Shown here piece after piece: positions 22,544-58,057 of a DNA stretch of 64,000 bases. Source of the stretch: Ostrea edulis (lineage: Eukaryota); assembly GCF_947568905.1 (NCBI RefSeq), contig NC_079167.1:59458001-59522000 (forward strand), read 5' to 3'. Position 1 is the first letter of the stretch, and each line of letters begins with the position of its first letter. Under the pieces are notes generated by a model. The model saw only the letters and a program-made list of their open reading frames with translations, was not told the DNA's origin and did no database searches. The translations under genes and the position numbers were made by a program.

Positions 22544-24965
22544 CTGAAAATGTAATTAAAATATACAGTCCATGAAACACTCTTTCCCACATTAATAGTG
22601 AGTGAATGGGAAAGTAGATCGTTACAGGGGCTTTGAAGTTACACAGGTACAGCTGTACATATAAAATCGATGTGCACATACATGTGAATAAAATATCCAT
22701 AGTGTCAGAATTAAAATGCATAAATATTACTATTAATAGTGTATGTGCATCGGTAAGGTGTTCATTTCATAAGCTACAATTCAATAGGCTATAGAGTGAA
22801 TAAATTAAGCGATATATATATATATTACAAACGAGGACAAGAGTGATGTACATATACGTTTTAGTTTATTGTTATTTTTTATTTGATATACCAAACTTGT
22901 ATATTGTTTAAACTTACTAAGTATGATTTCGTTCTACTCAAAAATTCAGAGTTATCAATCAATATAACCATGCATATCATGCTAATGTTGCATACTTTGT
23001 GTATTAGTAAATGATGTACATTTGATGTTATAGTATTTCAAAATTAATGTTCTTAGAATTTGAATTTCTTTTGTTTACAAATCAAATTATACACAGGTCT
23101 TACAATTGCCAAATATACAGAATGAATCATTTACATGTCGATGCTGGCATTTATAAGATATTAATATTAACTACAAAACTATACTCACATTACTCGACTG
23201 TTCACCAGCTCTCAGACTTTGTGTTACAAGAATGGCTTGGGTTTTCCAAAACTTTGACCTACACAGCATATCAAATCCCGAAAAAATTGCATAACTAGGA
23301 TCGGCTGTATGAGTCTTGGCCATAGCATCCCGCTGTGCCATTCCTCGTTAACTCTCGGTAAACACATTGCATGAAAGGGGGATCCTTAATTAGAATTCCC
23401 AGAGCAGAGCATGCACACCCACAAGCAAATGAAATGAATTCATTTGTTCAACATATTGTTGAGTTAAAAATACACTTTTATTATTTTTTTTGTATATTTT
23501 AAAACTGACATAAGATATGATTACCGGTATACGGTAGATGTCGTAATTTTTCTCTCTGTAGCATGGCTTTCTGCATGCATGCTGCACAATTTACATGGGT
23601 TTGGGCAAATGCGATTACTTTTAACTTTTCTTTCACAGTAAACGACCGACTGAAAATAAGCAATTGAAATAGGCCGACTATTGTCTGGCGTTCTCTTTTG
23701 AGTATAAAGATTGAACCAAAATTCTTATCGTAGTCGTAATCTACGTGAAATAAAATATCCGGAAAGTTATGGTTTAAAATAAGTATTACAACTCTAATTT
23801 GAATATAGGCTTTTGCCTATTTTAGACGACCAGACAAAATCAATTAATTACTATATCACACGCAGTTTCATAATTTCCACAACGTTGAAGAACTGACGTC
23901 GGGATATCGTCGTTTTCCCACATCAGACTGACCACAACCAATTATCAACGTCATAACGACGTCAATAGCCGACATTGATTAGACGTAGCAATTTGACGTC
24001 CATCCGACGTTGGAATTTAGTCATCTGACGTCTCGACCTAAATTCAACCAAAATCCGACGTCGATTTGACGTCACGTGTTTGCTGGGTTTTTTCAGTATC
24101 AATAGTTTACCAGATGATTTATTTTATCCATGCAGTACATAGAATTCATCTGAAAGATATATTTCTATTGTGTGCAAATTAAATTTAATAAAGATTTTTG
24201 CAAAAACCTATGAGGATCGATCGTCAGTGATTGTCCCGAGAGAATGTCCATTTTCACAAGTCAGGGTTACTTCGCGTTAGTGACGTGTGAAGATGGAGAA
24301 TGTCATGAAACTGGTTTTAATGTAGTATATTTGTAATTTGCATATTCTTTATAACAATATTGTCCAGTAATATCTCTATGCATTTCTTGTGATGTAAAAA
24401 GATTAAGCACCCCCCCCCCCTCTCTCTCTCTACATACCCAAATCGTTAATCATGTGTACCCTATGCCAGTATTGGCATTTAAGGTAAACAAGGCCTTTTA
24501 CGTGAACGTGTTTATTTTTGTGCCCCTACCCTCTTGTAAATGCCACCTCTTTTAATGACGACAGCACACACATAGATCTAGTCATTCATAATTTTGTTAC
24601 CGGAAGAAATTATGTAAATTTTAATAAATATAGCAGGCATTCTGCGTGACTGACACCCATAGCCTGTGTGTGACAAGCCCCCTGTACACGAAAAATATCA
24701 CACAGGGTGACACATGGTCCACGTAACACCAATGTAAAACCAATCCATCAGCGGTAACGTTACACCCGCCAAGAACTTCCCTTATATGTTCAGGAATCTA
24801 CTGACGCGTCATGACGTATTGAAGATTTAGTCACTTGTCGATTTATATTGAAACGTACACCCGGAGAAGTGACCATTTCTCATTCAGAATCTGATACGAA
24901 CTTGTTGATATTGTGACACGAATTTTTTCCCCGTTAATTTTAATTATCTAGAATATAAAGACAAA

Positions 24966-26735
24966 ATGAATGCATTGACTGTGATTTTAATAATTTGGAG
25001 TGTGAATATAATCTACGGACAATTTATCCCACCTGGACTTAATAATCAAGGAGGCTTCCAAGTTGGTTTTCCTCCAAATGCAGGTCCTAACCAAGGTTTT
25101 CCGCCAAATAATCAAGGATTTCCTCCCAATGGACCAAACATTTTACCAAATGCTGGAGGCTTCCCTCCGAACAATGGTCCGAGAATTTTCCCGAATGGAC
25201 CAAACAATCCAGGATTGACAGGAGGATTTCCGAGGCCATTCCGTAAGTTATGAATTTATCTAAAGCGCTGTTAAAAAATCCATGAGCATCTAGTACATTT
25301 AAAACTGCCAAATATTCCGTGAACTATATGTATTGCCACATATCAGATGTACATATGTACATGTACAAAAACTTATAAAGCTTTCTGATTTCCTTCATAT
25401 TCTAGGCCCCGGACAAAGACCTGGAACAGTGGTGTCAGGAAACAATTTTATTTACGGAACATGCTATTTCAATGAGACTGGTTCCAACGTCAGAGGGCGA
25501 GTGGACGTCAGACAAGCGGTGAGTCTCGGATTCATCTTTATACATTATATACATATGCGATGGATATTTCATGTTTCATATACAATGTACCAATATTCAT
25601 TGTAATGGGAGTGGTATTTTTTTAATATTACAGAGGACAGGCGGTCCCTGTCAGGTGCGTGTTCAGGTCGTAGGTCTGCCCCCAAGTCTGATGAGTGATA
25701 CAGAACACGGAATTCATGTTCACGAATATGGTGATCTGGGAAGAGGCTGCTATGCCGCTGGACCTCACTACGATTCAGACTCGTTCTCCTTCCATGGATC
25801 TCCTAATAATCTTGGAACGTAGGTTTTTATAAACGACTTCTATCATTCTCTCTCAATTTCCTCCGAGGGGTCTCCGCGGTCGAACTTTTTGCCGCAGCCG
25901 ACCAAGAGAACTCTCTGAAAATTCTAAGAAAAATGCATTTAAGCATTCTTGTGAAACAGTTCAAAATAATCTGAATTCCATTTACGTTATCAGAACTTTT
26001 CCAATTTCAGTGGCAACAGCCATGAAGGCGACATGGGCAATCTGCGACAGTCAAATGCCGGAATCATTGATGCGGAATTGACATTACCTCTCATGACTTT
26101 AGCCGGGGACTTGGGAATCGTTGGACGGGCTATCGTGGTGAGTAACCAATCAGCTTTTATTTCTGATATAACGAGCGATGTAACACTGACGGCGACGCTT
26201 TGATATAACTTTACCAAACGGAAGTTGCGCAGTGCCCCAGGGTATCGCGTGTTGATCTGGAAATGTCTCGTTTGGTAAACAAATCTCACCATCCTACATT
26301 GCTATGGATATTTAATGATTAAGGAGAATATTCGAAAACAAAATCATCTTAGAAATCCATATGTACATGAGATGTGTAGCCGGCACATGCACGATGAAAA
26401 GAAAACATATTGTTAATACTGTCTTTTATTTCCTTTAGTTACATGAGGGTCGCGATGATTTAGGACGAGGCGGAAATCCAATGAGTCTACAGACCGGAAA
26501 TGCAGGTGCTCCCATTGCCTGTTGTACAATAGGATTATCTGACGCGTCGAATTGGAACAACCCATTCATTCCAAGATCTAATGTTGTAAGTCAGAATGCA
26601 CCAGCAGGCAATGGTCAGTTTTCAACGCTGAATACCCAGGGCATGCAGTTTAACCCTAGTCCCAGAGGTCAACAGGGAACTCTACCCAGAAACACACAAA
26701 ATCAAGCATTTCCCGGAAATTTCCAAGGGAAGTAA
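24966..26735 (+). CDS. Secreted extracellular-type Cu/Zn superoxide dismutase-like protein A with G/P/N/F/Q low-complexity arms, 5 exons, 332 aa
   Basis: Exons 24966-25242, 25406-25518, 25634-25818, 26011-26137, 26439-26735 (999 nt, GT-AG, phases 1,0,2,0). Signal peptide [21 protein letters not shown] motifs [74 protein letters not shown] at 26971-26976. Confidence 0.93.
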
Positions 26736-26878
26736 CTCTGACGTTCTGGTTTAATAGAGGATTAAGTTCAGTGAACACACGGGTACTGGTGATTTGTTGA
26801 CAACAAAGCTATAGGAAATATCCTAAACAAATGTGATAAAGTGCAAATGACCTTAATTTGGTGCGCATAGTATGATAT

Positions 26879-26932
<54 letters not shown>

Positions 26933-27420
26933 ATTGTTGTATTACTTTTGATGACTTTAATTTTTCTACAAATAAAAGTTTGAATTTCACAAAAAAGAGT
27001 TTTTTATAATGTTATAAGTATGTCAAGCTCATATACGGACAAAAGATTAATCAGTTTGCTTGTCACCGAAATAATATACACAAAACAAGCAGATTCAAAG
27101 AAATAGGGAGGGGACTATTTATCAAAAATCACTTGGTGTGCCGTCTTGCAGTGAATATACAATATTTTTTATTTGATCGTATTATTGTGCATCAATTTTT
27201 AATAAAATGCTCATCAGAAATCTTTAATGTCTAAATTATTAACGATTGTATCTCACTGTCAAGGAGACGGAAGGAGTGGTACACGCAGTTCCCATCTCTT
27301 TCCAGTCACTCTCCAGATTTCCTCCCTTATATAGTTCTATATCTCTTGTTTTGATATATCCCTATACTTTCTTCCCTTTCTCCCCCCTTCCCACTGTCCC
27401 TCCCTTTGACTATACTCCAT

Positions 27421-27664
27421 CTCCGTGGCCGAGTGGTTAGAGCATCGCGCTCAAAATCACACGGCCTCTCGCCTCTGGTCGGCGCGGGTTCGAATCCTGC
27501 TCGCGCCAGTAAGTGAGAAAGTTTCCCAGTTTACTTTCGGAAGGTCGGTGGTCTCTTCCCAGGTGCATTGTATCTGGGTTCTCTCTTCCACCAATAAAAA
27601 CTGGGCGCCACCAGATAACTGAAAAATTATTGAGTGTGGCCGAAAACAGCAAATAATCAATCAA
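27421..27664 (+). mobile_element. tRNA-derived SINE inserted in a CT-rich minisatellite
   Basis: A box TGGCCGAGTGG (27426-27436) and B box GGTTCGAATCC (~27487-27497), body with ccaccaataaaaactgg...gataactgaaaaattattga, tail (AATC)n. Flanked on both sides by cactgtccctccct-ttactataccccat repeats (27370-27420, 27680-27825). Confidence 0.8.
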
Positions 27665-27879: not shown

Positions 27880-30392
27880 CGAGGGTGAGTCAATAAGTAA
27901 CCAGCCTATCCCATTACCGATTAACCGAGACGGCCACGATTTTTATGCCTTGTTTCAATACATGTTTTATACCTGGATATAAGATTACACGCGTATCGAG
28001 TCATTCTGTGATAAGATATTGAATGTCAAACATGGCTAGTGATGCAAAGGCATGCTTTTCATCTAAAGTTGAGTACCGTGCTATAATTCGGTACTTGTAT
28101 TTAAAAGGTAAAACAGGCAAGGAAATGCACGGCGAGTTAGCCGATGTTTATAGGTCTTTTGCACCATCTTATGCTCAGGTTAAATCCTGGGTAGGGGAAT
28201 TCAAACGCGGTAGAACGTCTTTAGAAGATGAAGCAGGTCTGGACGCCCACTGGATGCCACCGACGACGCGGTTGAGTTAAGGCTTTCCCCATAAAATTTT
28301 TAATGCCAGTGCTGTACATAAATATGCTTTACCGCACTGGCACATTGCACGACGTCACAATGAAAATTACCTCATGACGAAGGTCATGACGTACATATCT
28401 ACAGTCCTTTTGTGGTTGGAAATGTCAAAATATTGTTTCGTTATTTACCACCGCTGTCAAACGGTAAACTGCAATCGCGTAAAAGTTTCTGTCAAATGGG
28501 TTATATTAATTCTCTTTGATATTGAAAAAGTTTCAATTTCTTCTTTATATAGCATACATGCTAAAGTAATATCCATATTATATTGTGATATTGATATCGC
28601 CCCTAATCTACACGTATACATGTAGTTACTTTCACAATGGACTCATTTGCATAAACAGGGTTTCCGTACATAAAAATTTCATCATTGGCACGACACCCCG
28701 AGGTTTTTAAGTGAAAGATGTTTGATTTATGTGACATGTGAACTTCAGTGCCAAAGGAAAGTTAGGGGGGCAAGTTCTGGCTTCAACAGAAAATATGTTT
28801 TTCAGGCTAGATTCAACTTCGTGTGTGCAAAAATCGCTGCATCTTGCATATCCAATGCAAAAATTAGACATGTTACAAGTCACAATAAAGTTGCGCTCAT
28901 CACTTTTCAAATTAAGAAATTAATATGCTTTGAAGTTATTTTAACTTCAACTTGCATTGATATCTGGATATCGTGCCAATTCTACGATTTATATATACAC
29001 GATACGTTTTTATCTTGGTATTTGATCACGTGATAGAGAATTGATGTGGAGACTGTCGGTATGGTGAAAAATGTATAAGAGGTCAATATGCACTTAATGA
29101 TATATACATATTGTTTTTGTATAAAAGGGTTGTGTTTACAGAATTTGTCACAAATTGATCTGTTTATTAATGCTTTTTTCCTGATATATTTCTATGGCCC
29201 TACTTGACACAACTGCGGAAGAAATGTGAACATAAGAAAGTCCGGGATCTGGTACACTCTGGTAGGCGAATTCAGGTGGAAGAAATAGCGCAGGCATTAG
29301 GCATTTCACTTGGTAGCGTTTCAACAATCTTACATGATCGTTTAGGCATGCGCAAGCCAACAGCCCTTTGGGTCCCCAAATTCCTTTGAGATGAGCAAAT
29401 GACAACCAGAGTGTCAGTATGCAGCTCCTTGTTGAAGCGTTTTAGGTCAAAAGATGATTTTCATTTGTGTCTGGCGACTGTAGATGAGACTTTGGTTCAT
29501 CATTATGAGCCAGAGAATAAAGCTCAGAGTCATCAGTGGGTAGAGCCTAGGTCCTCGAAGTTCAAAATGCAACCATCTGCTGGCAAGGTGATGACCACTG
29601 TATTTTGGGAAGCACAAGGCTTTATTATGTTGGACGTTTTACCCAGGAGAAGTACAATAACTGTAGTGTACTATGCAAACTTGCTAGACCAGCTGAGAAT
29701 TGCCATCCGTGAAAAACGCCGAGGTAAATTCTCTAAAGGTGTTTTGCTGCAACAGGACAACGCGAGAGTCCACACTTGCAATGGATGCTGTATAGAGCGA
29801 AACGGATATGAATCCAGGGCCGTAAATTACATGGAGGCGGAGGAGGCAGCTGCCTCCTCCAACTTTTGAGCCAAAAAAAATTAAAATTTAAAGTTCATTA
29901 GAATTTATGTTGTTTCCAATAACTAAGAACATGATACCTCCCTTAAAAAGCATTCCAAATCTTTCTTTTAGAATGAGTTAGTCAAGTAACATCTTAGAAG
30001 GGCCTAGAATCAAGGATTTTGCACGAAACGTGTTCAGTGTGCACAAAATGTGCTCAGCGTCTGGGGGCCGCCCAGGCCCCCAGACCCCCGCCTAATTTCC
30101 TGCCTCCTCCAAATTGAAGGTTAATTTACGGCCCTGGAATCAATACCACATCCTGTCTATTCGCCTGACTTAGCTCCTAGCGACTTCTTCCTATTCCCAA
30201 ACTTGAAAAAGGGTATCCGTGGACGTCATTTCCGGTCTGAAACGGACCCCTACTTTTTCAGTTCTGGACTGATGGCACTTGAACACCGTTGGTCTGAGTG
30301 CATTACACTAGAGGGCAATTACAATGAAAAAGAAGAGGTGGATCTCAACAACCGGAAATAAGTTAGGCTAGTTACTTATTGACTAGCCCTCG
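27880..30392 (+). mobile_element. Decayed mariner (DD34D-type) transposon with two nested insertions
   Basis: TIRs CGAGGGTGAGTCAATAAGTAAC and reverse CGAGGGCTAGTCAATAAGTAAC, with TA on the left. Transposase pieces: 28023-28265 (EYRAIIRYLYLKG...VKSWVGEFKRGRTSLED), 29218-29814 (WVPK, TVDETLVHHY, QQDNARVH) and 30137-30240 (HPVYSPDLAPSDFFLFPNLK). Stops and frameshifts present. Insertions at ~28268-29217 and 29815-30136. Confidence 0.92.
29815..30136. mobile_element. CAGGGCCGTAAATTA MITE with 5-bp TSD, copy 1 (inside the mariner transposase)
   Basis: TIR CAGGGCCGTAAATTA...TAATTTACGGCCCTG and TSD GAATC (29810-29814, 30137-30141). Near-identical to 59957-60270. Confidence 0.9.
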
Positions 30393-30792: not shown

Positions 30793-31007
30793 GCGCGCTC
30801 AAGAAATTTGTTTGGCTGCTGGACTTAGCTAAACTACATACTAGCATGTAAAACGCACAAAAAGGCTTAGAATATGTGTTAATTCATTATTATTATTATT
30901 ATTAGAATTTTCCACTGGAACCAATTACGATGAAGCAAACTTTACACCCCAACTCACACAGTAAACAGATAAGAGATAACCTTCAACTGAATCAAAACGA
31001 TTTTTAA

Positions 31008-31490
31008 AGACAAAGTATCAGCGTATACAGACAACGTGTCAGTGTATACAGACAAAATATCAGCGTATACAGACAACGTGTCAGCATATACAGACAACGT
31101 GTCAGCGTATATAGACAAAGTATCAGCGTATAGAGACAACTTGTCAGTGTATACAGACAAAGTATCAGCGTATACAGACAACGTATCAGCGTATAAAGAC
31201 AAAGTATCAGCGTATACAGACAACGTGTCAGCGTATACAGACAAAGTATCAGCGTATACAGACAACGTGTCAGCGTATACAGACAAAGTATCAGCGTATA
31301 CAGACAACGTGTCAGCGTATACAGACAAAGTATCAGCGTATAGAGACAACGTGTCAGTGTATACAGACAAAGTATCAGCGTATACAGACAACGTGTCAGC
31401 GTATAAAGACAAAGTATCAGCGTATACAGACAACGTGTCAGTGTATACAGACAAAGTATCAGCGTACATGTATATAGACAAAGTATCAGC
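31008..31490. repeat. 21-bp minisatellite (~23 units) with alternating variants forming a 42-bp dimer
   Basis: gacaaagtatcagcgtataca alternates with gacaacgtgtcagcgtataca. Confidence 0.95.
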
Positions 31491-32587
31491 AAATATAAAT
31501 ATATTTTTGGTTACAATGAGTTTTATATATTTATGGTTACAATGAGTTTCGGGTCAAAACGGGCTTAGCCCCTGTGGGTAATGGGGACTCAAATTGTTTG
31601 AATGAAGGGTCACAAGTTTACGACTTGTGACAAAGGCGGGCCACAACATGAGTTTTGAAGTTTTGAAGTTTACATATGAGCCGTTCCTAGCAAAAAGGGC
31701 CCTTAAGTATATTAGTGCTAATATGTGAACTATAGAGAACATCCCTCAAAATATTAGAGCAATCTTGGTTGTCGTTAAAATATTGCAGTCAATCAAAGAT
31801 GACAACCAACTTGTGATTGGTAATCATGACCTTTTTCTTTACAAGTATACAAAAAATGACGTTGCGTTTTTTCATTATGACGTTTTTTGAAAAAAGCAAA
31901 AACATTGTTGGATAAGATAAGGGGCTTTTTTGCTAGGAACGGCTCATATAATAGGAATATACAGGAAAACGCCTTAACATTGTCTCTAGAACAACAATGG
32001 TATATACATGTATTTCAAATTAATATACAAACATACTCCTGTAAAATATATTAAAGTTTGAAATACCATGACCTGGAGTTAAGTGGGCGCACAAGAAGGG
32101 GAGGGGGTTCATATTGTACACGGGACGATGCAATGGATGATCATGTGAATGATGTCGCCCGTGGGTATCTTGTTTACCGTCTGCGGTCTGGTGGAAGTGC
32201 GCAGTGACTGGGCTATCGTTTAATATTTTAGAAATATCGCATTGGAAGTTCTAATCGAACACGGTTTTCTCTCTCTTAACTTCATGTTGTGCACATTTGT
32301 TTACAACCGTGCTTCGCATGTGTATGCATCGCTCTCGCTGTATTTATCGTTACCCACCGATGAATATCTATTTAAACATGTTTAATAGCTATTCAATGTT
32401 ATATGATACATTTTTATTTCTCTCTCATGAGTCTGTTTGTAGAAGATACATGCATGTATGTCTAATGGTATAAAGTTATGAATTTCCAGTAATAGCATGC
32501 CTGAAAACTTTTCCGAAATGGGAAATAATTTATTTTTAAAAAGGATACTTATCGTTGGGTAGTAGAGCGATGGGTACAAATGTGAAA

Positions 32588-35675: not shown

Positions 35676-51517
<15,842 letters not shown>

Positions 51518-55379: not shown

Positions 55380-56786
55380 ATGTGGAAAGTAACTTTAATT
55401 GCCGTGGTGACTTTGTTTGCGGGAACAAGTTTAGCACAGTTTAATAATTTTAACCAGCAAGGACCTCCACAGTTTGGGGGTGCCCAGAATCAACAGTCTG
55501 GTGGATTTCCTCAAAATTTTGGACAACAGAATCAAGGAGGAGGATTCCAGCCTCAGAATCAAGGTGGGTTCCCCAACCAAGGGCAGCAGCCCGGTGGCTT
55601 TCCAAATCAAGGCCAACAACCAGGGGGGAATTTTCCTCAGGGAGGACAGCAACCGGGATTTCCCCAACGTGACAATCAGGGAGGCGGCTTCCCTCAGGGT
55701 GGTCAGCAACCTGGTGGATTTCCGAACCAAAATCAAGGTTTACCGCCACAGAACCAAGGTGCTTTTCCGCCACAGAACCAAGGGGGATTTCCTCCACAGA
55801 ACCAAGGGGGATTTCCTCCACAGAACCAAGGGGGATTTCCCCCACAGAACCAAGGGGGATTTCCACCTCAGGGGCAGCAAAATGGTCCACAAGCAAATAG
55901 GCCGGGACTCGGAGGATTTCAGCCAAACGCCATTGGTGGGTTTGGAACTGTCGGCAACAGGTTTGGTAACCCTTTCGTTCCTGGAAATGTCCTTGGGGCC
56001 AATTTACCTGGTGCAAATGGAGCTGGAAATAATCAAAGTAAGTACACACAAAAAATTAACAAGGTTATAAAATTTATATTGTATTTTTGTTTTAAAAAAT
56101 GCATTTTAATTTTTATTACAGAAGGATTGTTTTATGATCCGCCGATTTATTTTCTAGCTGAATGTGTTTGCACAAATGTTAAAATCACCATCAATTTTTC
56201 GTGACTGATGTTATGATAGGTATATCTAATACACTTCCTTTAACATACCCGAATGTGTAATTACACCATTCTATATGTACAGATCAATTCACCGCCGGGG
56301 GGCAGCTGTTTATGAGCCTCTCACAGAACCCGAACAACTATCGCTACGCAACTTGTTACTTTAATTCGACGGAAAACAGTATCAAAGGACGGGCCGACTT
56401 CAGACAATTTGTAAGTTAATTTTATAAAAAGATGTTTTATTTTTTTTAAATTGCATAATATTTATGTGTAAAATTTAAGTTGCTTTGAAATGATTTTGTA
56501 GAGTCTTTATACTTTGGTTAATGTGCTCATTTGGAATTCTGATCACGACTTCGAAATTTTTTTTACAAGAACGTATTTTGTTTTAGTTGTTTGGTGACTC
56601 GGGGGTGGATATAAGAATTCAGGTGGTGGGACTTCCCACTTCACCTGTTGATACCCAGAGAGGAATTCATATTCACGAATTTGGAGACACCGGCGAGAGA
56701 TGTTCCCGAGTGGGACCTCATTTCAACCCCACTCAGTCCCGTCACGGTGGCAGAAACAGCTACCCATTGTAAGTACACCAGACCCT

Positions 56787-56853
<67 letters not shown>

Positions 56854-58057
56854 TGTTGTACATAATCAACGACGGGGATATTTTGTTCTTATTTCCTTGA
56901 TAATATTTTGAAAAATTAGTTTTATCAATAAATTGGTACCTTCATATTTCTAGCTTGCGTCATGTTGGAGACTTGGGGAACATGCTGCAGTCAGCCCAGG
57001 GCGTGACTTCTACACAGTTCAGAGATGAGGTCATTTCACTCCAGGGCCAGGGCAGTATTCTGGGCAGATCGCTGGTGGTAAGGATATATTTTTTCCAAAT
57101 GAAAAATACAAAACAAACAAAAAAAACCTTTATCTGTTTTTCTTGAATATAGATACAAATTTAAATAAGCAGTATAAAATTTATTTTCTCTATGTACATA
57201 AAATCAGCTGTTCTTCGGAGTATACCTGTTTCATGATTTTTACATATTTAATTCAAATGTAAGGAGGGATGAATTAGGTGTGATGTTTCTACGTAGAAAC
57301 CTTTTCTGGGAAAGCAATATAAAAAAATCTCTGATTATCCAGTCAATTAAAAAAAATGCAAGTAAACTTTATAGATTAATAACTTCTGTGGTTTCTAGAT
57401 AAAATTGGAGCGGGATGATGAAGGCACGGGAACAAACTCCAACAGTCAACAGAACGGGAACGCGCGCACCCCCATCGCCTGCTGCACGATCGGACGAGCC
57501 AGCCCCGCTAACTGGAGGACTCCATACTCCGAAGACGACCTGATGGTCATGTCCGGGGGAGCCTGGTCACCCAGCACAGGTAATTGATACAGATACACTG
57601 TTTTAGAGACCTTCCGATAATTTGTATGCTTTTGGGTGTTTCTTTTTATCAGTAAATGTGCACTATCCGGTAAAGTATTTGAAAATTGCCTTATCACATA
57701 CAATGATATTGATATCAGTAAGGAAGAGTTCTATGTCGACTTAGATATATCAGGCAGGGGGCATATACTATGACGACGTAAGTTCACTTTTGTCCTTGAA
57801 TTGTAGGTTCTAGTTCAGACACAAGCCTCCAGGGAGCCCAGTCTGGTGTGAACACGCAGGGAACACAGACCAGGGTCAACAATCAGGGAGCACCCACCAA
57901 TACCCAGGGAACACAGACAGGGTTCAACGCTCAGGGATCAGGTCTAGGGGGCAGAAATAGCTTTAATACAGGTGGATCACCGTTTTCAAATAACTTAGGA
58001 GGCGGATCTAACGCTGGACAGTCTTCCTTTGGTTTCTTAGGAAATCAAGGAAAATAA
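55380..58057 (+). CDS. Secreted extracellular-type Cu/Zn SOD-like protein B with a ~200-aa Q/G/N/P/F repeat arm, 6 exons, 507 aa
   Basis: Exons 55380-56037, 56283-56410, 56587-56768, 56954-57077, 57399-57579, 57807-58057 (1524 nt, GT-AG, phases 1,0,2,0,1). Signal peptide MWKVTLIAVVTLFAGTSLA. SOD motifs [75 protein letters not shown] at 58136-58141. Confidence 0.93.
56789..56851. repeat. Poly-C tract (~62 nt) in intron 3 of SOD-like gene B
   Basis: Uninterrupted C run starting ~20 nt after the exon 3 donor. Confidence 0.9.

What the first reader, a model, noticed from the sequence alone, without database searches (positions are those of the whole stretch)
26493..26540. Catalytic Arg143 replaced by Pro in both SOD-like paralogs while gene A keeps all seven metal ligands
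Seen: gene A reads [14 protein letters not shown] and gene [15 protein letters not shown], against SOD1 TGNAGSRLACGVIG and SOD3 NGNAGRRLACCVVG, so Pro sits at the Arg143 position in both. Gene A retains equivalents of H46, H48, H63, H71, H80, D83 and H120. Established: Arg143 positions superoxide at the Cu, and substituting it sharply lowers activity. Inference: gene A binds Cu and Zn but dismutates poorly, and may act as a metal carrier or as an oxidase/peroxidase-like cross-linker. The shared Pro implies the change predates the duplication and has been conserved. Gene B has an Arg two residues upstream that might partly compensate.
Basis: partly seen in the sequence, partly recalled or inferred. 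Interest (0 to 1): 0.7.

Follow-up and report, generated by a model that had tools for sequence, protein, structure and literature searches.

The report
Arginine-less secreted SOD-like pair in bivalves
Two neighbouring flat-oyster genes encode secreted proteins with the copper/zinc superoxide dismutase fold in which the catalytic arginine is a proline; this change is real, dates from before living bivalves diverged and is under strong selection, so these are probably not ordinary antioxidant enzymes, though their activity is untested.

Summary
The window is Ostrea edulis. Gene A (24966-26735, 5 exons, 332 aa) and gene B (55380-58057, 6 exons, 507 aa, identical to LOC125670441) both have Pro at the Arg143 column of human SOD1 and SOD3, in a gapless alignment. 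Gene A keeps all seven metal ligands. Gene B has Lys at His120.

The Pro codon is unchanged in two other DNA samples and in spliced transcripts of a close relative. Those transcripts differ from gene A at 15 coding sites, all synonymous.

Relatives form two families, A-like and B-like. Named members come from oysters, pearl oysters, scallops, mussels, unionids, heterodont clams and the protobranch Solemya. Pro sits at 143 in 31 of 32 members. A and B together form one clade (100/99), so a single Arg-to-Pro change preceded a duplication older than crown Bivalvia.

Gene A has also lost the other steering charges (E132N, E133M, K136Q). Published surveys list the oyster and scallop orthologs and report a more-than-200-fold rise at gastrulation in scallop. 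None of the four bivalve SOD papers and one review I text-searched discusses the arginine.

Best reading: SOD3-derived metal-binding modules in embryonic or larval secreted proteins, not fast dismutases. Activity, metal content and site of expression were not tested. The scan's only other notes on these genes are on this same window.

The parts
24966..26735 (+). Gene A: 5-exon gene for a 332-aa secreted SOD3-like protein. It has a signal peptide, an N/P/G/F-rich N-terminal region, a Sod_Cu domain and a Q/N/G-rich tail. Exons: 24966-25242, 25406-25518, 25634-25818, 26011-26137, 26439-26735.
   Evidence: Model. All four splice joints are seen in spliced contigs of X19/X20. Pfam Sod_Cu. Compared with the relative's transcripts there are 15 synonymous and 0 nonsynonymous differences.
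26511..26513 (+). Gene A codon CCC = Pro259, at the Arg143 position of SOD1.
   Evidence: Gapless phmmer alignment to SOD1 and SOD3. Family alignment. No variant at this codon in X13, X15, X19 or X20.
25715..25795 (+). Gene A exon 3 ligand codons: H158 (H46) 25715-25717, H160 (H48) 25721-25723, H175 (H63) 25766-25768, H184 (H71) 25793-25795. Cys169, the C57 equivalent, also lies here.
26021..26032 (+). Gene A exon 4 ligand codons: H196 (H80) 26021-26023 and D199 (D83) 26030-26032.
26442..26444 (+). Gene A H236 (H120), the fourth Cu ligand.
55380..58057 (+). Gene B: 6-exon gene for a 507-aa secreted SOD3-like protein with a long GGFPPQNQ-type repeat region before the domain and a Q/G/T/N-rich tail. 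Exons: 55380-56037, 56283-56410, 56587-56768, 56954-57077, 57399-57579, 57807-58057.
   Evidence: Model. Identical to P0169, Ostrea edulis LOC125670441. Pfam Sod_Cu on exons 3 and 4.
57471..57473 (+). Gene B codon CCC = Pro389, at the Arg143 position.
57402..57404 (+). Gene B codon AAA = Lys366, at the His120 (Cu ligand) position.
   Evidence: It is Lys in 15 of 16 B-like proteins and Thr in Solemya.

Best explanation
Genes A and B are the Ostrea edulis members of two old sister families of secreted, SOD3-derived proteins. Every named member is a bivalve.

Shown here. A canonical Cu/Zn-SOD beta-barrel carries the SOD3-type extra cysteine pair and a conserved N-x-T sequon. It sits between low-complexity Q/N/G/P-rich regions, behind a signal peptide. 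On the stem of the two families the catalytic Arg143 became Pro. The families then duplicated before the last common ancestor of living bivalves. A-type proteins of oysters, pearl oysters and scallops keep all Cu and Zn ligands, Asp124 and Thr137, but have neutral residues at every steering position (E132N, E133M, K136Q, R143P). B-type proteins additionally replace the Cu ligand His120 by Lys. Both genes are under strong purifying selection.

Inferred. The barrel is kept as a metal-binding and structural module: Cu plus Zn in A, essentially Zn only in B. It is not kept as a diffusion-limited dismutase. A would at most have the residual activity of Arg143 mutants, and B would have none. Given the published burst of expression from gastrula to D-veliger and the matrix-like repeat flanks, I think they most likely act in an embryonic or larval extracellular matrix or secretion. 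What they do there is open.
For: Alignment to SOD1 and SOD3. Site table for 32 family members, with Pro in 31 of 32, ligands conserved and H120K in B. Tree with A+B at 100/99, A at 98/93 and B at 100/100, each including Solemya, unionids, heterodonts and pteriomorphs. AlphaFold models with pLDDT 82 and 91 that superpose on SOD1 at TM 0.93 and rmsd 1.6-1.7 A. Spliced transcripts in a relative, with dS about 0.064 and dN 0 (p about 4e-10). The roles of Arg143 (orients and H-bonds superoxide, limits anion size together with Thr137, anchors the electrostatic loop to the disulfide loop) are reviewed in PMC8247289. Cu-only SOD and CSRP domains that lack most of the electrostatic loop still keep the active-site Arg (PMC12217663). 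In scallop, Cu/Zn-SOD2 (P0013, A-like) and Cu/Zn-SOD3 (510 aa, B-like by length and pI) rise more than 200-fold at gastrulation and stay high to the D-veliger (PMC6949909). In oyster, two ec-Cu/Zn-SODs with 6 and 7 conserved ligands, which I take to be these orthologs, rise from the gastrula; cg_XM_011436744.3 (335 aa, the probable A ortholog) is described as not expressed in adults (PMC9118643).
Against: No enzyme assay, metal analysis or localisation exists for any member. From memory of the mutagenesis literature, not checked here, Arg143 substitutions leave roughly 1-40% of activity, which could still be a useful extracellular SOD. Full ligand conservation in pteriomorph A proteins argues that the Cu site itself matters. 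The larval-matrix role rests only on expression timing and amino-acid composition. A larval-shell proteome paper (PMC6231486) does not mention SOD in its main text.
Confidence: 0.6

Rival explanations
1. Gene A is still an efficient extracellular Cu/Zn SOD. Another basic side chain (Arg at position 55 or 123) or the geometry of the Pro-bearing loop replaces Arg143. Long-range steering charges are dispensable at seawater ionic strength.
For: All seven ligands, Asp124, Thr137 and the disulfide are conserved in pteriomorph A proteins. R167 (position 55) is A-specific and R239 (position 123) is family-wide. Elsewhere a basic residue sits directly before an independently acquired Pro143: P0099 has K-P and P0031 has R-P. 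The fold is canonical.
Against: Gene A has Ala, not a basic residue, at position 142. Arg at 123 also occurs in SODs that keep Arg143 (P0060, P0046, P0026), so it is not a specific compensator. Three A-like lineages (Potamilus, an unnamed one, Dreissena) and all B-like proteins went on to lose His120, which suggests Cu catalysis is not the conserved function.
Confidence: 0.2
2. Gene A uses its Cu site for other redox chemistry, such as peroxidase, thiol or catechol oxidase activity or protein cross-linking. Removing Arg143 opened the channel to larger or neutral substrates.
For: Arg143 and Thr137 limit the size of anions that reach Cu (PMC8247289). The protein has matrix-like repeat flanks and is expressed at the time the first larval shell is formed (PMC6949909, PMC9118643).
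Against: There is no direct evidence. Recurrent loss of His120 in the family argues against a conserved Cu-redox role.
Confidence: 0.1
3. Gene A is a decaying or functionless copy. PMC9118643 suggested that the C. gigas ortholog might be a pseudogene or nearly functionless.
For: The C. gigas ortholog is described as not expressed in adults and not induced by stress (PMC9118643).
Against: The reading frame is intact with GT-AG introns. Transcripts in a relative are spliced. There are 15 synonymous and 0 nonsynonymous differences. The SOD domain is 97% identical to Saccostrea and 79% identical to scallop. Orthologs are present across the bivalve orders sampled.
Confidence: 0.02
4. The Pro is an assembly or sequencing error, or a private allele.
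For: None found.
Against: The same codon is present in independent DNA samples X13 and X15 and in X19/X20, in gene B, and in 31 of 32 family proteins from other species.
Confidence: 0.01

Closest known systems
Vertebrate extracellular SOD (SOD3, PDB 2JLP)
   Same: Secreted. Same barrel. All seven ligands in gene A. Shares the Cys in strand 1 plus the Cys-Cys pair after position 143, and a Trp a few residues downstream. It is the best-scoring single-domain PDB sequence match for gene A exon 5.
   Different: SOD3 has Arg at the 143-equivalent position, an N-terminal oligomerisation helix and a basic heparin-binding tail. The oyster proteins have Pro, no charged steering residues, and Q/N/G/P-rich low-complexity flanks.
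CCS domain II (SOD1-like domain of the copper chaperone)
   Same: A SOD-like barrel that keeps the Zn site but has lost Cu-site residues and is not a dismutase (review PMC13017621). Gene B parallels this with His120 replaced by Lys.
   Different: [quoted passage not shown] Genes A and B are secreted, have no such domains, and gene A keeps all four Cu ligands.
Oyster dominin / cavortin / Cg-EcSOD type plasma proteins
   Same: Bivalve extracellular SOD-fold proteins regarded as devoid of SOD activity (PMC13017621, PMC9118643).
   Different: Those proteins lack an intact Cu site, are about 180-190 aa without repeat flanks, and are highly expressed in juveniles and adults. They fall in other clades of the oyster SOD tree (PMC9118643). 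A and B keep 7 and 6 ligands and are embryonic or larval.
Cu-only SODs and animal CSRPs
   Same: Extracellular derivatives of the Cu/Zn-SOD fold. Oysters have them too.
   Different: Those have lost the Zn ligands and most of the electrostatic loop but keep the active-site Arg and are active (PMC12217663, PMC13017621). Here it is the reverse: the Zn site and a full-length loop are kept and the Arg is lost.
Engineered SOD1 Arg143 mutants
   Same: Same position altered with an intact metal site. This is the only experimental guide to the consequence.
   Different: Those are laboratory point mutants in a background that keeps E132, E133 and K136. As far as I recall, no Pro substitution has been characterised.

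Membership tests
Cu/Zn superoxide dismutase superfamily (Pfam PF00080, Sod_Cu) | Significant profile match | tested here: met
   Exon 3 alone scores 42.2 bits (A) and 46.2 bits (B) against a cut-off of 28.9. Exons 4 and 5 match adjoining parts of the profile.
Cu/Zn superoxide dismutase superfamily (Pfam PF00080, Sod_Cu) | Eight-stranded Greek-key barrel with zinc loop and loop VII | tested here: met
   AlphaFold models (pLDDT 82 for an A-like domain 97% identical to gene A; 91 for gene B) superpose on SOD1 structures with TM 0.93 and rmsd 1.6-1.7 A.
Catalytically competent Cu/Zn SOD (EC 1.15.1.1) | Four Cu ligands (H46, H48, H63, H120) | tested here: inconclusive
   Met in gene A (H158, H160, H175, H236). 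Not met in gene B (K366 at position 120).
Catalytically competent Cu/Zn SOD (EC 1.15.1.1) | Zn ligands (H63, H71, H80, D83) and Asp124 | tested here: met
   Present in both genes. In gene A the loop between them is 4 residues longer than in SOD1.
Catalytically competent Cu/Zn SOD (EC 1.15.1.1) | Active-site Arg143 | tested here: not met
   Pro in both genes.
Catalytically competent Cu/Zn SOD (EC 1.15.1.1) | Charged steering residues of the electrostatic loop (E132, E133, K136) | tested here: not met
   N, M, Q in gene A and N, N, Q in gene B.
Catalytically competent Cu/Zn SOD (EC 1.15.1.1) | Measured superoxide dismutation and Cu/Zn content | not testable with these tools
   Needs recombinant protein.
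SOD3-type extracellular SOD | Signal peptide, plus a strand-1 Cys and a Cys-Cys pair | tested here: met
   Hydrophobic N-termini followed by Gln, read by eye. C112 and C262-C263 in A; C244 and C392-393 in B. No signal-peptide predictor was run.
SOD3-type extracellular SOD | Basic heparin-binding C-terminal tail | tested here: not met
   The tails are Q/N/G/T-rich and end in Gly-Lys.
CCS (copper chaperone for SOD) | The other Cu-binding domains that CCS carries fused to its SOD-like domain | tested here: not met
   Pfam finds only Sod_Cu in the exon pieces scanned, and nothing in the gene B N-terminal region. The flanks are low-complexity.
Cu-only SOD / CSRP | Loss of Zn ligands and of most of loop VII; tandem domains in animals | tested here: not met
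   Zn ligands and a full-length loop VII are present, and there is a single domain.

The most novel reading that the evidence does not exclude
A and B are a co-evolved, co-expressed extracellular pair analogous to SOD1 and CCS. In this reading the Cu-competent but Arg-less A protein and the Cu-site-deficient, Zn-keeping B protein associate through the conserved SOD dimer surface in the embryonic or larval matrix. There they would handle copper, for instance by storing it or passing it to the copper enzymes that harden the first shell or periostracum, or carry out non-dismutase Cu chemistry. That would be a new function for the Cu/Zn-SOD fold, kept for roughly half a billion years.
Probability: 0.12. 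Interest if true: 0.75.

Novelty: new variant of a known kind. Interest (0 to 1): 0.5.

Why it matters
Derivatives of the Cu/Zn-SOD fold described so far lost metal sites (CCS domain II, dominin) or lost zinc and the electrostatic loop while keeping the arginine (Cu-only SODs, CSRPs). This family does the opposite. It keeps the bimetallic site and the loop backbone but removes the arginine and every steering charge, and it has kept that state under purifying selection across bivalve orders.

Three consequences follow:
- Counting metal ligands, as published oyster and scallop SOD surveys do, can misjudge which extracellular SODs are active.
- The suggestion that the C. gigas ortholog might be a pseudogene is contradicted.
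- There is now a clean natural experiment on what an intact Cu/Zn site does without Arg143, in a protein that rises sharply when the larval shell is first made.

Tried and rejected
1. Shell-field lead. The Dreissena single-cell study (PMC9261976) reports a bivalve-restricted shell-field gene with SOD similarity. Its supplement shows that Gene104051 has two adjacent SOD domains (residues about 291-444 and 446-605) covering a third of the protein, so it looks like a multi-domain, CSRP-type protein. I rejected it as evidence for A and B.

2. Larval shell proteome (PMC6231486). The main text does not mention SOD, and no supplements are held.

3. Literature. No paper combines Arg143, superoxide dismutase and bivalve. 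K1RAH2 is cited nowhere in the library. A search for assayed bivalve extracellular SODs found nothing on this family.

4. Arg at position 123 as a specific compensator. Rejected, because it also occurs in SODs that keep Arg143.

5. Side-chain geometry around the Cu site. Not possible, because the structure tool returns no coordinates.

6. The full-length gene A protein could not be given to search tools by reference, since it is spliced. I used exon pieces and the Saccostrea ortholog P0156, which is 97% identical in the domain. No O. edulis gene A protein turned up in the protein collection.

8. No run on record as RNA holds gene A in O. edulis itself.

Full report
**What is there**

The window is eukaryotic, with 35.6% G+C and one 200-N gap at 46883-47082. 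A scan of all six frames for SOD motifs found two loci on the + strand.

I built both gene models by hand from GT-AG sites.
- Gene A: 24966-25242, 25406-25518, 25634-25818, 26011-26137, 26439-26735; 332 aa.
- Gene B: 55380-56037, 56283-56410, 56587-56768, 56954-57077, 57399-57579, 57807-58057; 507 aa.

Gene B's product is identical to P0169, 'uncharacterized protein LOC125670441 [Ostrea edulis]', so the window is European flat oyster. Public runs labelled 'oyster metagenome' also hold the stretch.

**Checking the observation**

Pfam Sod_Cu matches exons 3-5 of gene A and exons 3-4 of gene B. The exon 3 pieces alone exceed the gathering score.

phmmer of gene A exon 5 against PDB sequences gives gapless alignments to human SOD1 and SOD3. 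In both, Pro259 (CCC, 26511-26513) falls on the Arg143 column: GNAGAPIAC against GNAGSRLAC and GNAGRRLACC. Gene B has Pro389 (57471-57473) in the same column.

Gene A has His or Asp at all seven ligand positions: H158, H160, H175, H184, H196, D199 and H236. Gene B has six of them, with Lys366 at His120. This agrees with the scan's separate note s1-279358.

One caveat applies to gene A. Its zinc loop is 1 residue longer between H63 and H71 and 3 residues longer between H71 and H80 than in SOD1. That may be why PMC9118643 counts six ligands for the C. gigas ortholog in one passage.

**Is it real DNA and a real gene?**

I laid four public runs on 24800-26900.
- Two DNA samples from other studies (X13, X15) cover the gene. 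In the coding sequence they differ from the window only at 26128, a synonymous change. The Pro codon is unchanged.
- Two runs of a closely related organism (X19, X20) hold spliced contigs with exactly the four predicted joints: 25242/25406, 25518/25634, 25818/26011 and 26137/26439. The gene is therefore transcribed and spliced as modelled.

Across the whole coding sequence, the contigs of these four runs differ from the window at 15 positions. All 15 are synonymous. With 76% of sites nonsynonymous, that has a probability of about 4e-10 under neutrality; dS is about 0.064 and dN is 0. This contradicts the suggestion in PMC9118643 that the C. gigas ortholog might be a pseudogene or nearly functionless.

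**Relatives**

The spliced proteins have no reference, so I searched an exhaustive HMM of the two exon 5 pieces against 1.84 billion representatives. There were 379 hits at E<=0.001. The motif scan over the best 150 found Pro at the 143 column 30 times.

Word searches seeded with full-length hits supplied names.
- A-like proteins (236-353 aa): Saccostrea, Pinctada, Azumapecten farreri 'Cu/Zn-SOD2', Argopecten, Ylistrum, Potamilus, Mactra, Dreissena and Solemya.
- B-like proteins (about 450-540 aa): Ostrea, Saccostrea, Crassostrea, Magallana, Mytilus, three scallops, Potamilus, Sinanodonta, Mercenaria, Dreissena and Solemya.

Every named member is a bivalve. The nearest named non-bivalve hits are ordinary Arg-bearing SODs, for example from a starfish and a mole. 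Unnamed transcript fragments could come from other classes, so restriction to bivalves is not proven.

**Site table**

- Pro is at position 143 in 31 of 32 members. Solemya A has Arg142-Ala143.
- All A-like proteins of oysters, pearl oyster and scallops keep the seven ligands, Asp124 and Thr137. Their steering positions are N, M and Q at 132, 133 and 136.
- His120 is Lys in three A-like lineages (Potamilus, one unnamed, Dreissena). Dreissena A has also lost the Zn site.
- All B-like proteins have Lys at 120 (Thr in Solemya), Asn at 137 and usually Arg at 141.

Residues that define both families include the CYFN-x-T sequon, Arg at position 123, Pro143, and Asn-Trp after the Cys-Cys pair. Arg at position 55 is specific to A.

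**Phylogeny**

I ran an IQ-TREE analysis (LG+C20) of 60 complete single SOD domains.
- A+B form one clade at 100/99 on a long branch, apart from all Arg-bearing domains.
- A (98/93) and B (100/100) are reciprocally monophyletic.
- Each contains the protobranch Solemya, unionids, heterodonts and pteriomorphs.

One Arg-to-Pro change on the common stem, followed by a duplication older than the crown of Bivalvia, is the simplest history.

The two genes lie 29 kb apart here. In Potamilus (locus tags 019450 and 019453), Argopecten and Dreissena, the two proteins come from contigs of identical length. In scallop they are on one chromosome (PMC6949909). In Solemya they appear to be on different chromosomes.

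Pro, or another non-Arg residue, at 143 has also arisen independently in other SOD3-like proteins: P0099 has Lys-Pro, P0031 has Arg-Pro and P0085 has Val.

**Structure**

AlphaFold models were made from family alignments.
- The A-like domain (P0156:95-285, 97% identical to gene A's domain) gave pLDDT 82 and pTM 0.80. It is weak only at the zinc-loop insert and part of loop VII.
- The gene B domain gave pLDDT 91 and pTM 0.88.

Both superpose on SOD1 crystal structures with target-normalised TM 0.93 and rmsd 1.6-1.7 A. Pro begins the last strand, where Arg143 does.

Coordinates are not returned.

**What is known**

Arg143 hydrogen-bonds and orients superoxide. With Thr137 it limits the size of incoming anions. 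Its guanidinium also ties loop VII to the disulfide loop (PMC8247289). Cu-only SODs and oyster CSRP domains, which lack most of loop VII, still keep an active-site Arg (PMC12217663). A 2026 review regards CSRP as the only active extracellular SOD of oysters and does not mention this family (PMC13017621).

The genes themselves are catalogued. In oysters, cg_XM_011436744.3 (335 aa), cg_XM_011436741.3 (524 aa), cv_XM_022460203.1 and Sgl011058/Sgl011055 match A and B by length (PMC9118643). I did not check them by sequence. In scallop they are Cu/Zn-SOD2 (284 aa, which is P0013) and Cu/Zn-SOD3 (510 aa) (PMC6949909).

Those papers report expression rising from the gastrula in oyster. In scallop it rises more than 200-fold at gastrulation and stays high to the D-veliger. 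Adult expression is low, with eye and male gonad highest in scallop. None of the four bivalve SOD papers and one review I text-searched discusses the arginine, and a library-wide search for Arg143 together with bivalve found nothing.

**Interpretation**

Shown:
- an old family pair of secreted SOD3-derived proteins, all named members bivalve;
- loss of Arg143 before their duplication;
- loss of all steering charges in A and of a Cu ligand in B;
- strong purifying selection;
- transcription.

Inferred:
- They are not fast dismutases.
- The barrel serves as a Cu/Zn module in A and a Zn module in B.
- They work in an embryonic or larval extracellular setting. This is suggested by the timing of expression and by flanks resembling those of matrix proteins.

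Recurrent replacement of His120 by Lys in both families suggests that copper catalysis is not the conserved function of the whole family. Against that, pteriomorph A proteins, including this one, have kept a complete copper site. The main rival reading is that A is still a competent SOD through a relocated basic residue. Only an assay or coordinates can decide.

**Verdict**

The evolutionary inference is supported. The functional inference is plausible but untested, and the proposed carrier or cross-linker roles are speculative. This is a previously unremarked variant of the Cu/Zn-SOD fold in already annotated genes, of moderate interest.

Noticed in passing
window 24966-25242, 26540-26735, 55380-56037, 57807-58057; also P0010, P0021, P0024, P0013: After the predicted signal peptide both proteins start with Gln, and both end in Gly-Lys. 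Orthologs end in Gly-Lys-Lys, Gly-Arg-Arg-Lys-Lys or plain Gly. These look like pyroglutamate and amidation signals conserved across bivalves. This is the subject of the scan's note s1-279328.
   Followed up: partly
window 25406-25480 and 56340-56370: The sequon N-E-T / N-S-T directly after the strand-1 cysteine (CYFN-x-T) is invariant in both families. It is a likely conserved N-glycosylation site on the SOD barrel.
   Followed up: partly
window 44324-44520 (+): An exon of the glycine cleavage system P-protein (glycine dehydrogenase; Pfam GDC-P, E 1e-31) lies between the two SOD-like genes.
   Followed up: partly
window 28023-29869 (+): A decayed mariner/Mos1-type transposon, with HTH_48 and a partial DDE transposase domain in separate ORFs interrupted by stops, sits just downstream of gene A.
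   Followed up: partly
window 30954-31545: About 590 bp that read as a 7-residue (21-nt) repeat in several frames (for example ADTLSVY repeated), so probably a minisatellite.
   Followed up: no
window 56789-56853: An uninterrupted run of about 65 C in intron 3 of gene B. It could be an assembly-prone homopolymer.
   Followed up: no
window 26882-26925 and 27420-27500: A (GA)n microsatellite lies in or just beyond the gene A 3' UTR. About 500 bp further on there is a tRNA-like stretch (probably a SINE head) that ARAGORN does not call as a tRNA.
   Followed up: partly
P0099, P0031, P0085 (hits): Arg143 has been lost independently in other SOD3-like proteins, twice with a basic residue moved to position 142 (Lys-Pro, Arg-Pro). 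The family to which P0099 and P0085 belong looks vertebrate-like from its loop motifs.
   Followed up: partly
window 25634-25650 (gene A Cys136): Gene A has a fifth cysteine (C136, strand 3) that gene B and scallop A proteins lack. It could be a free thiol or form an intermolecular disulfide.
   Followed up: no
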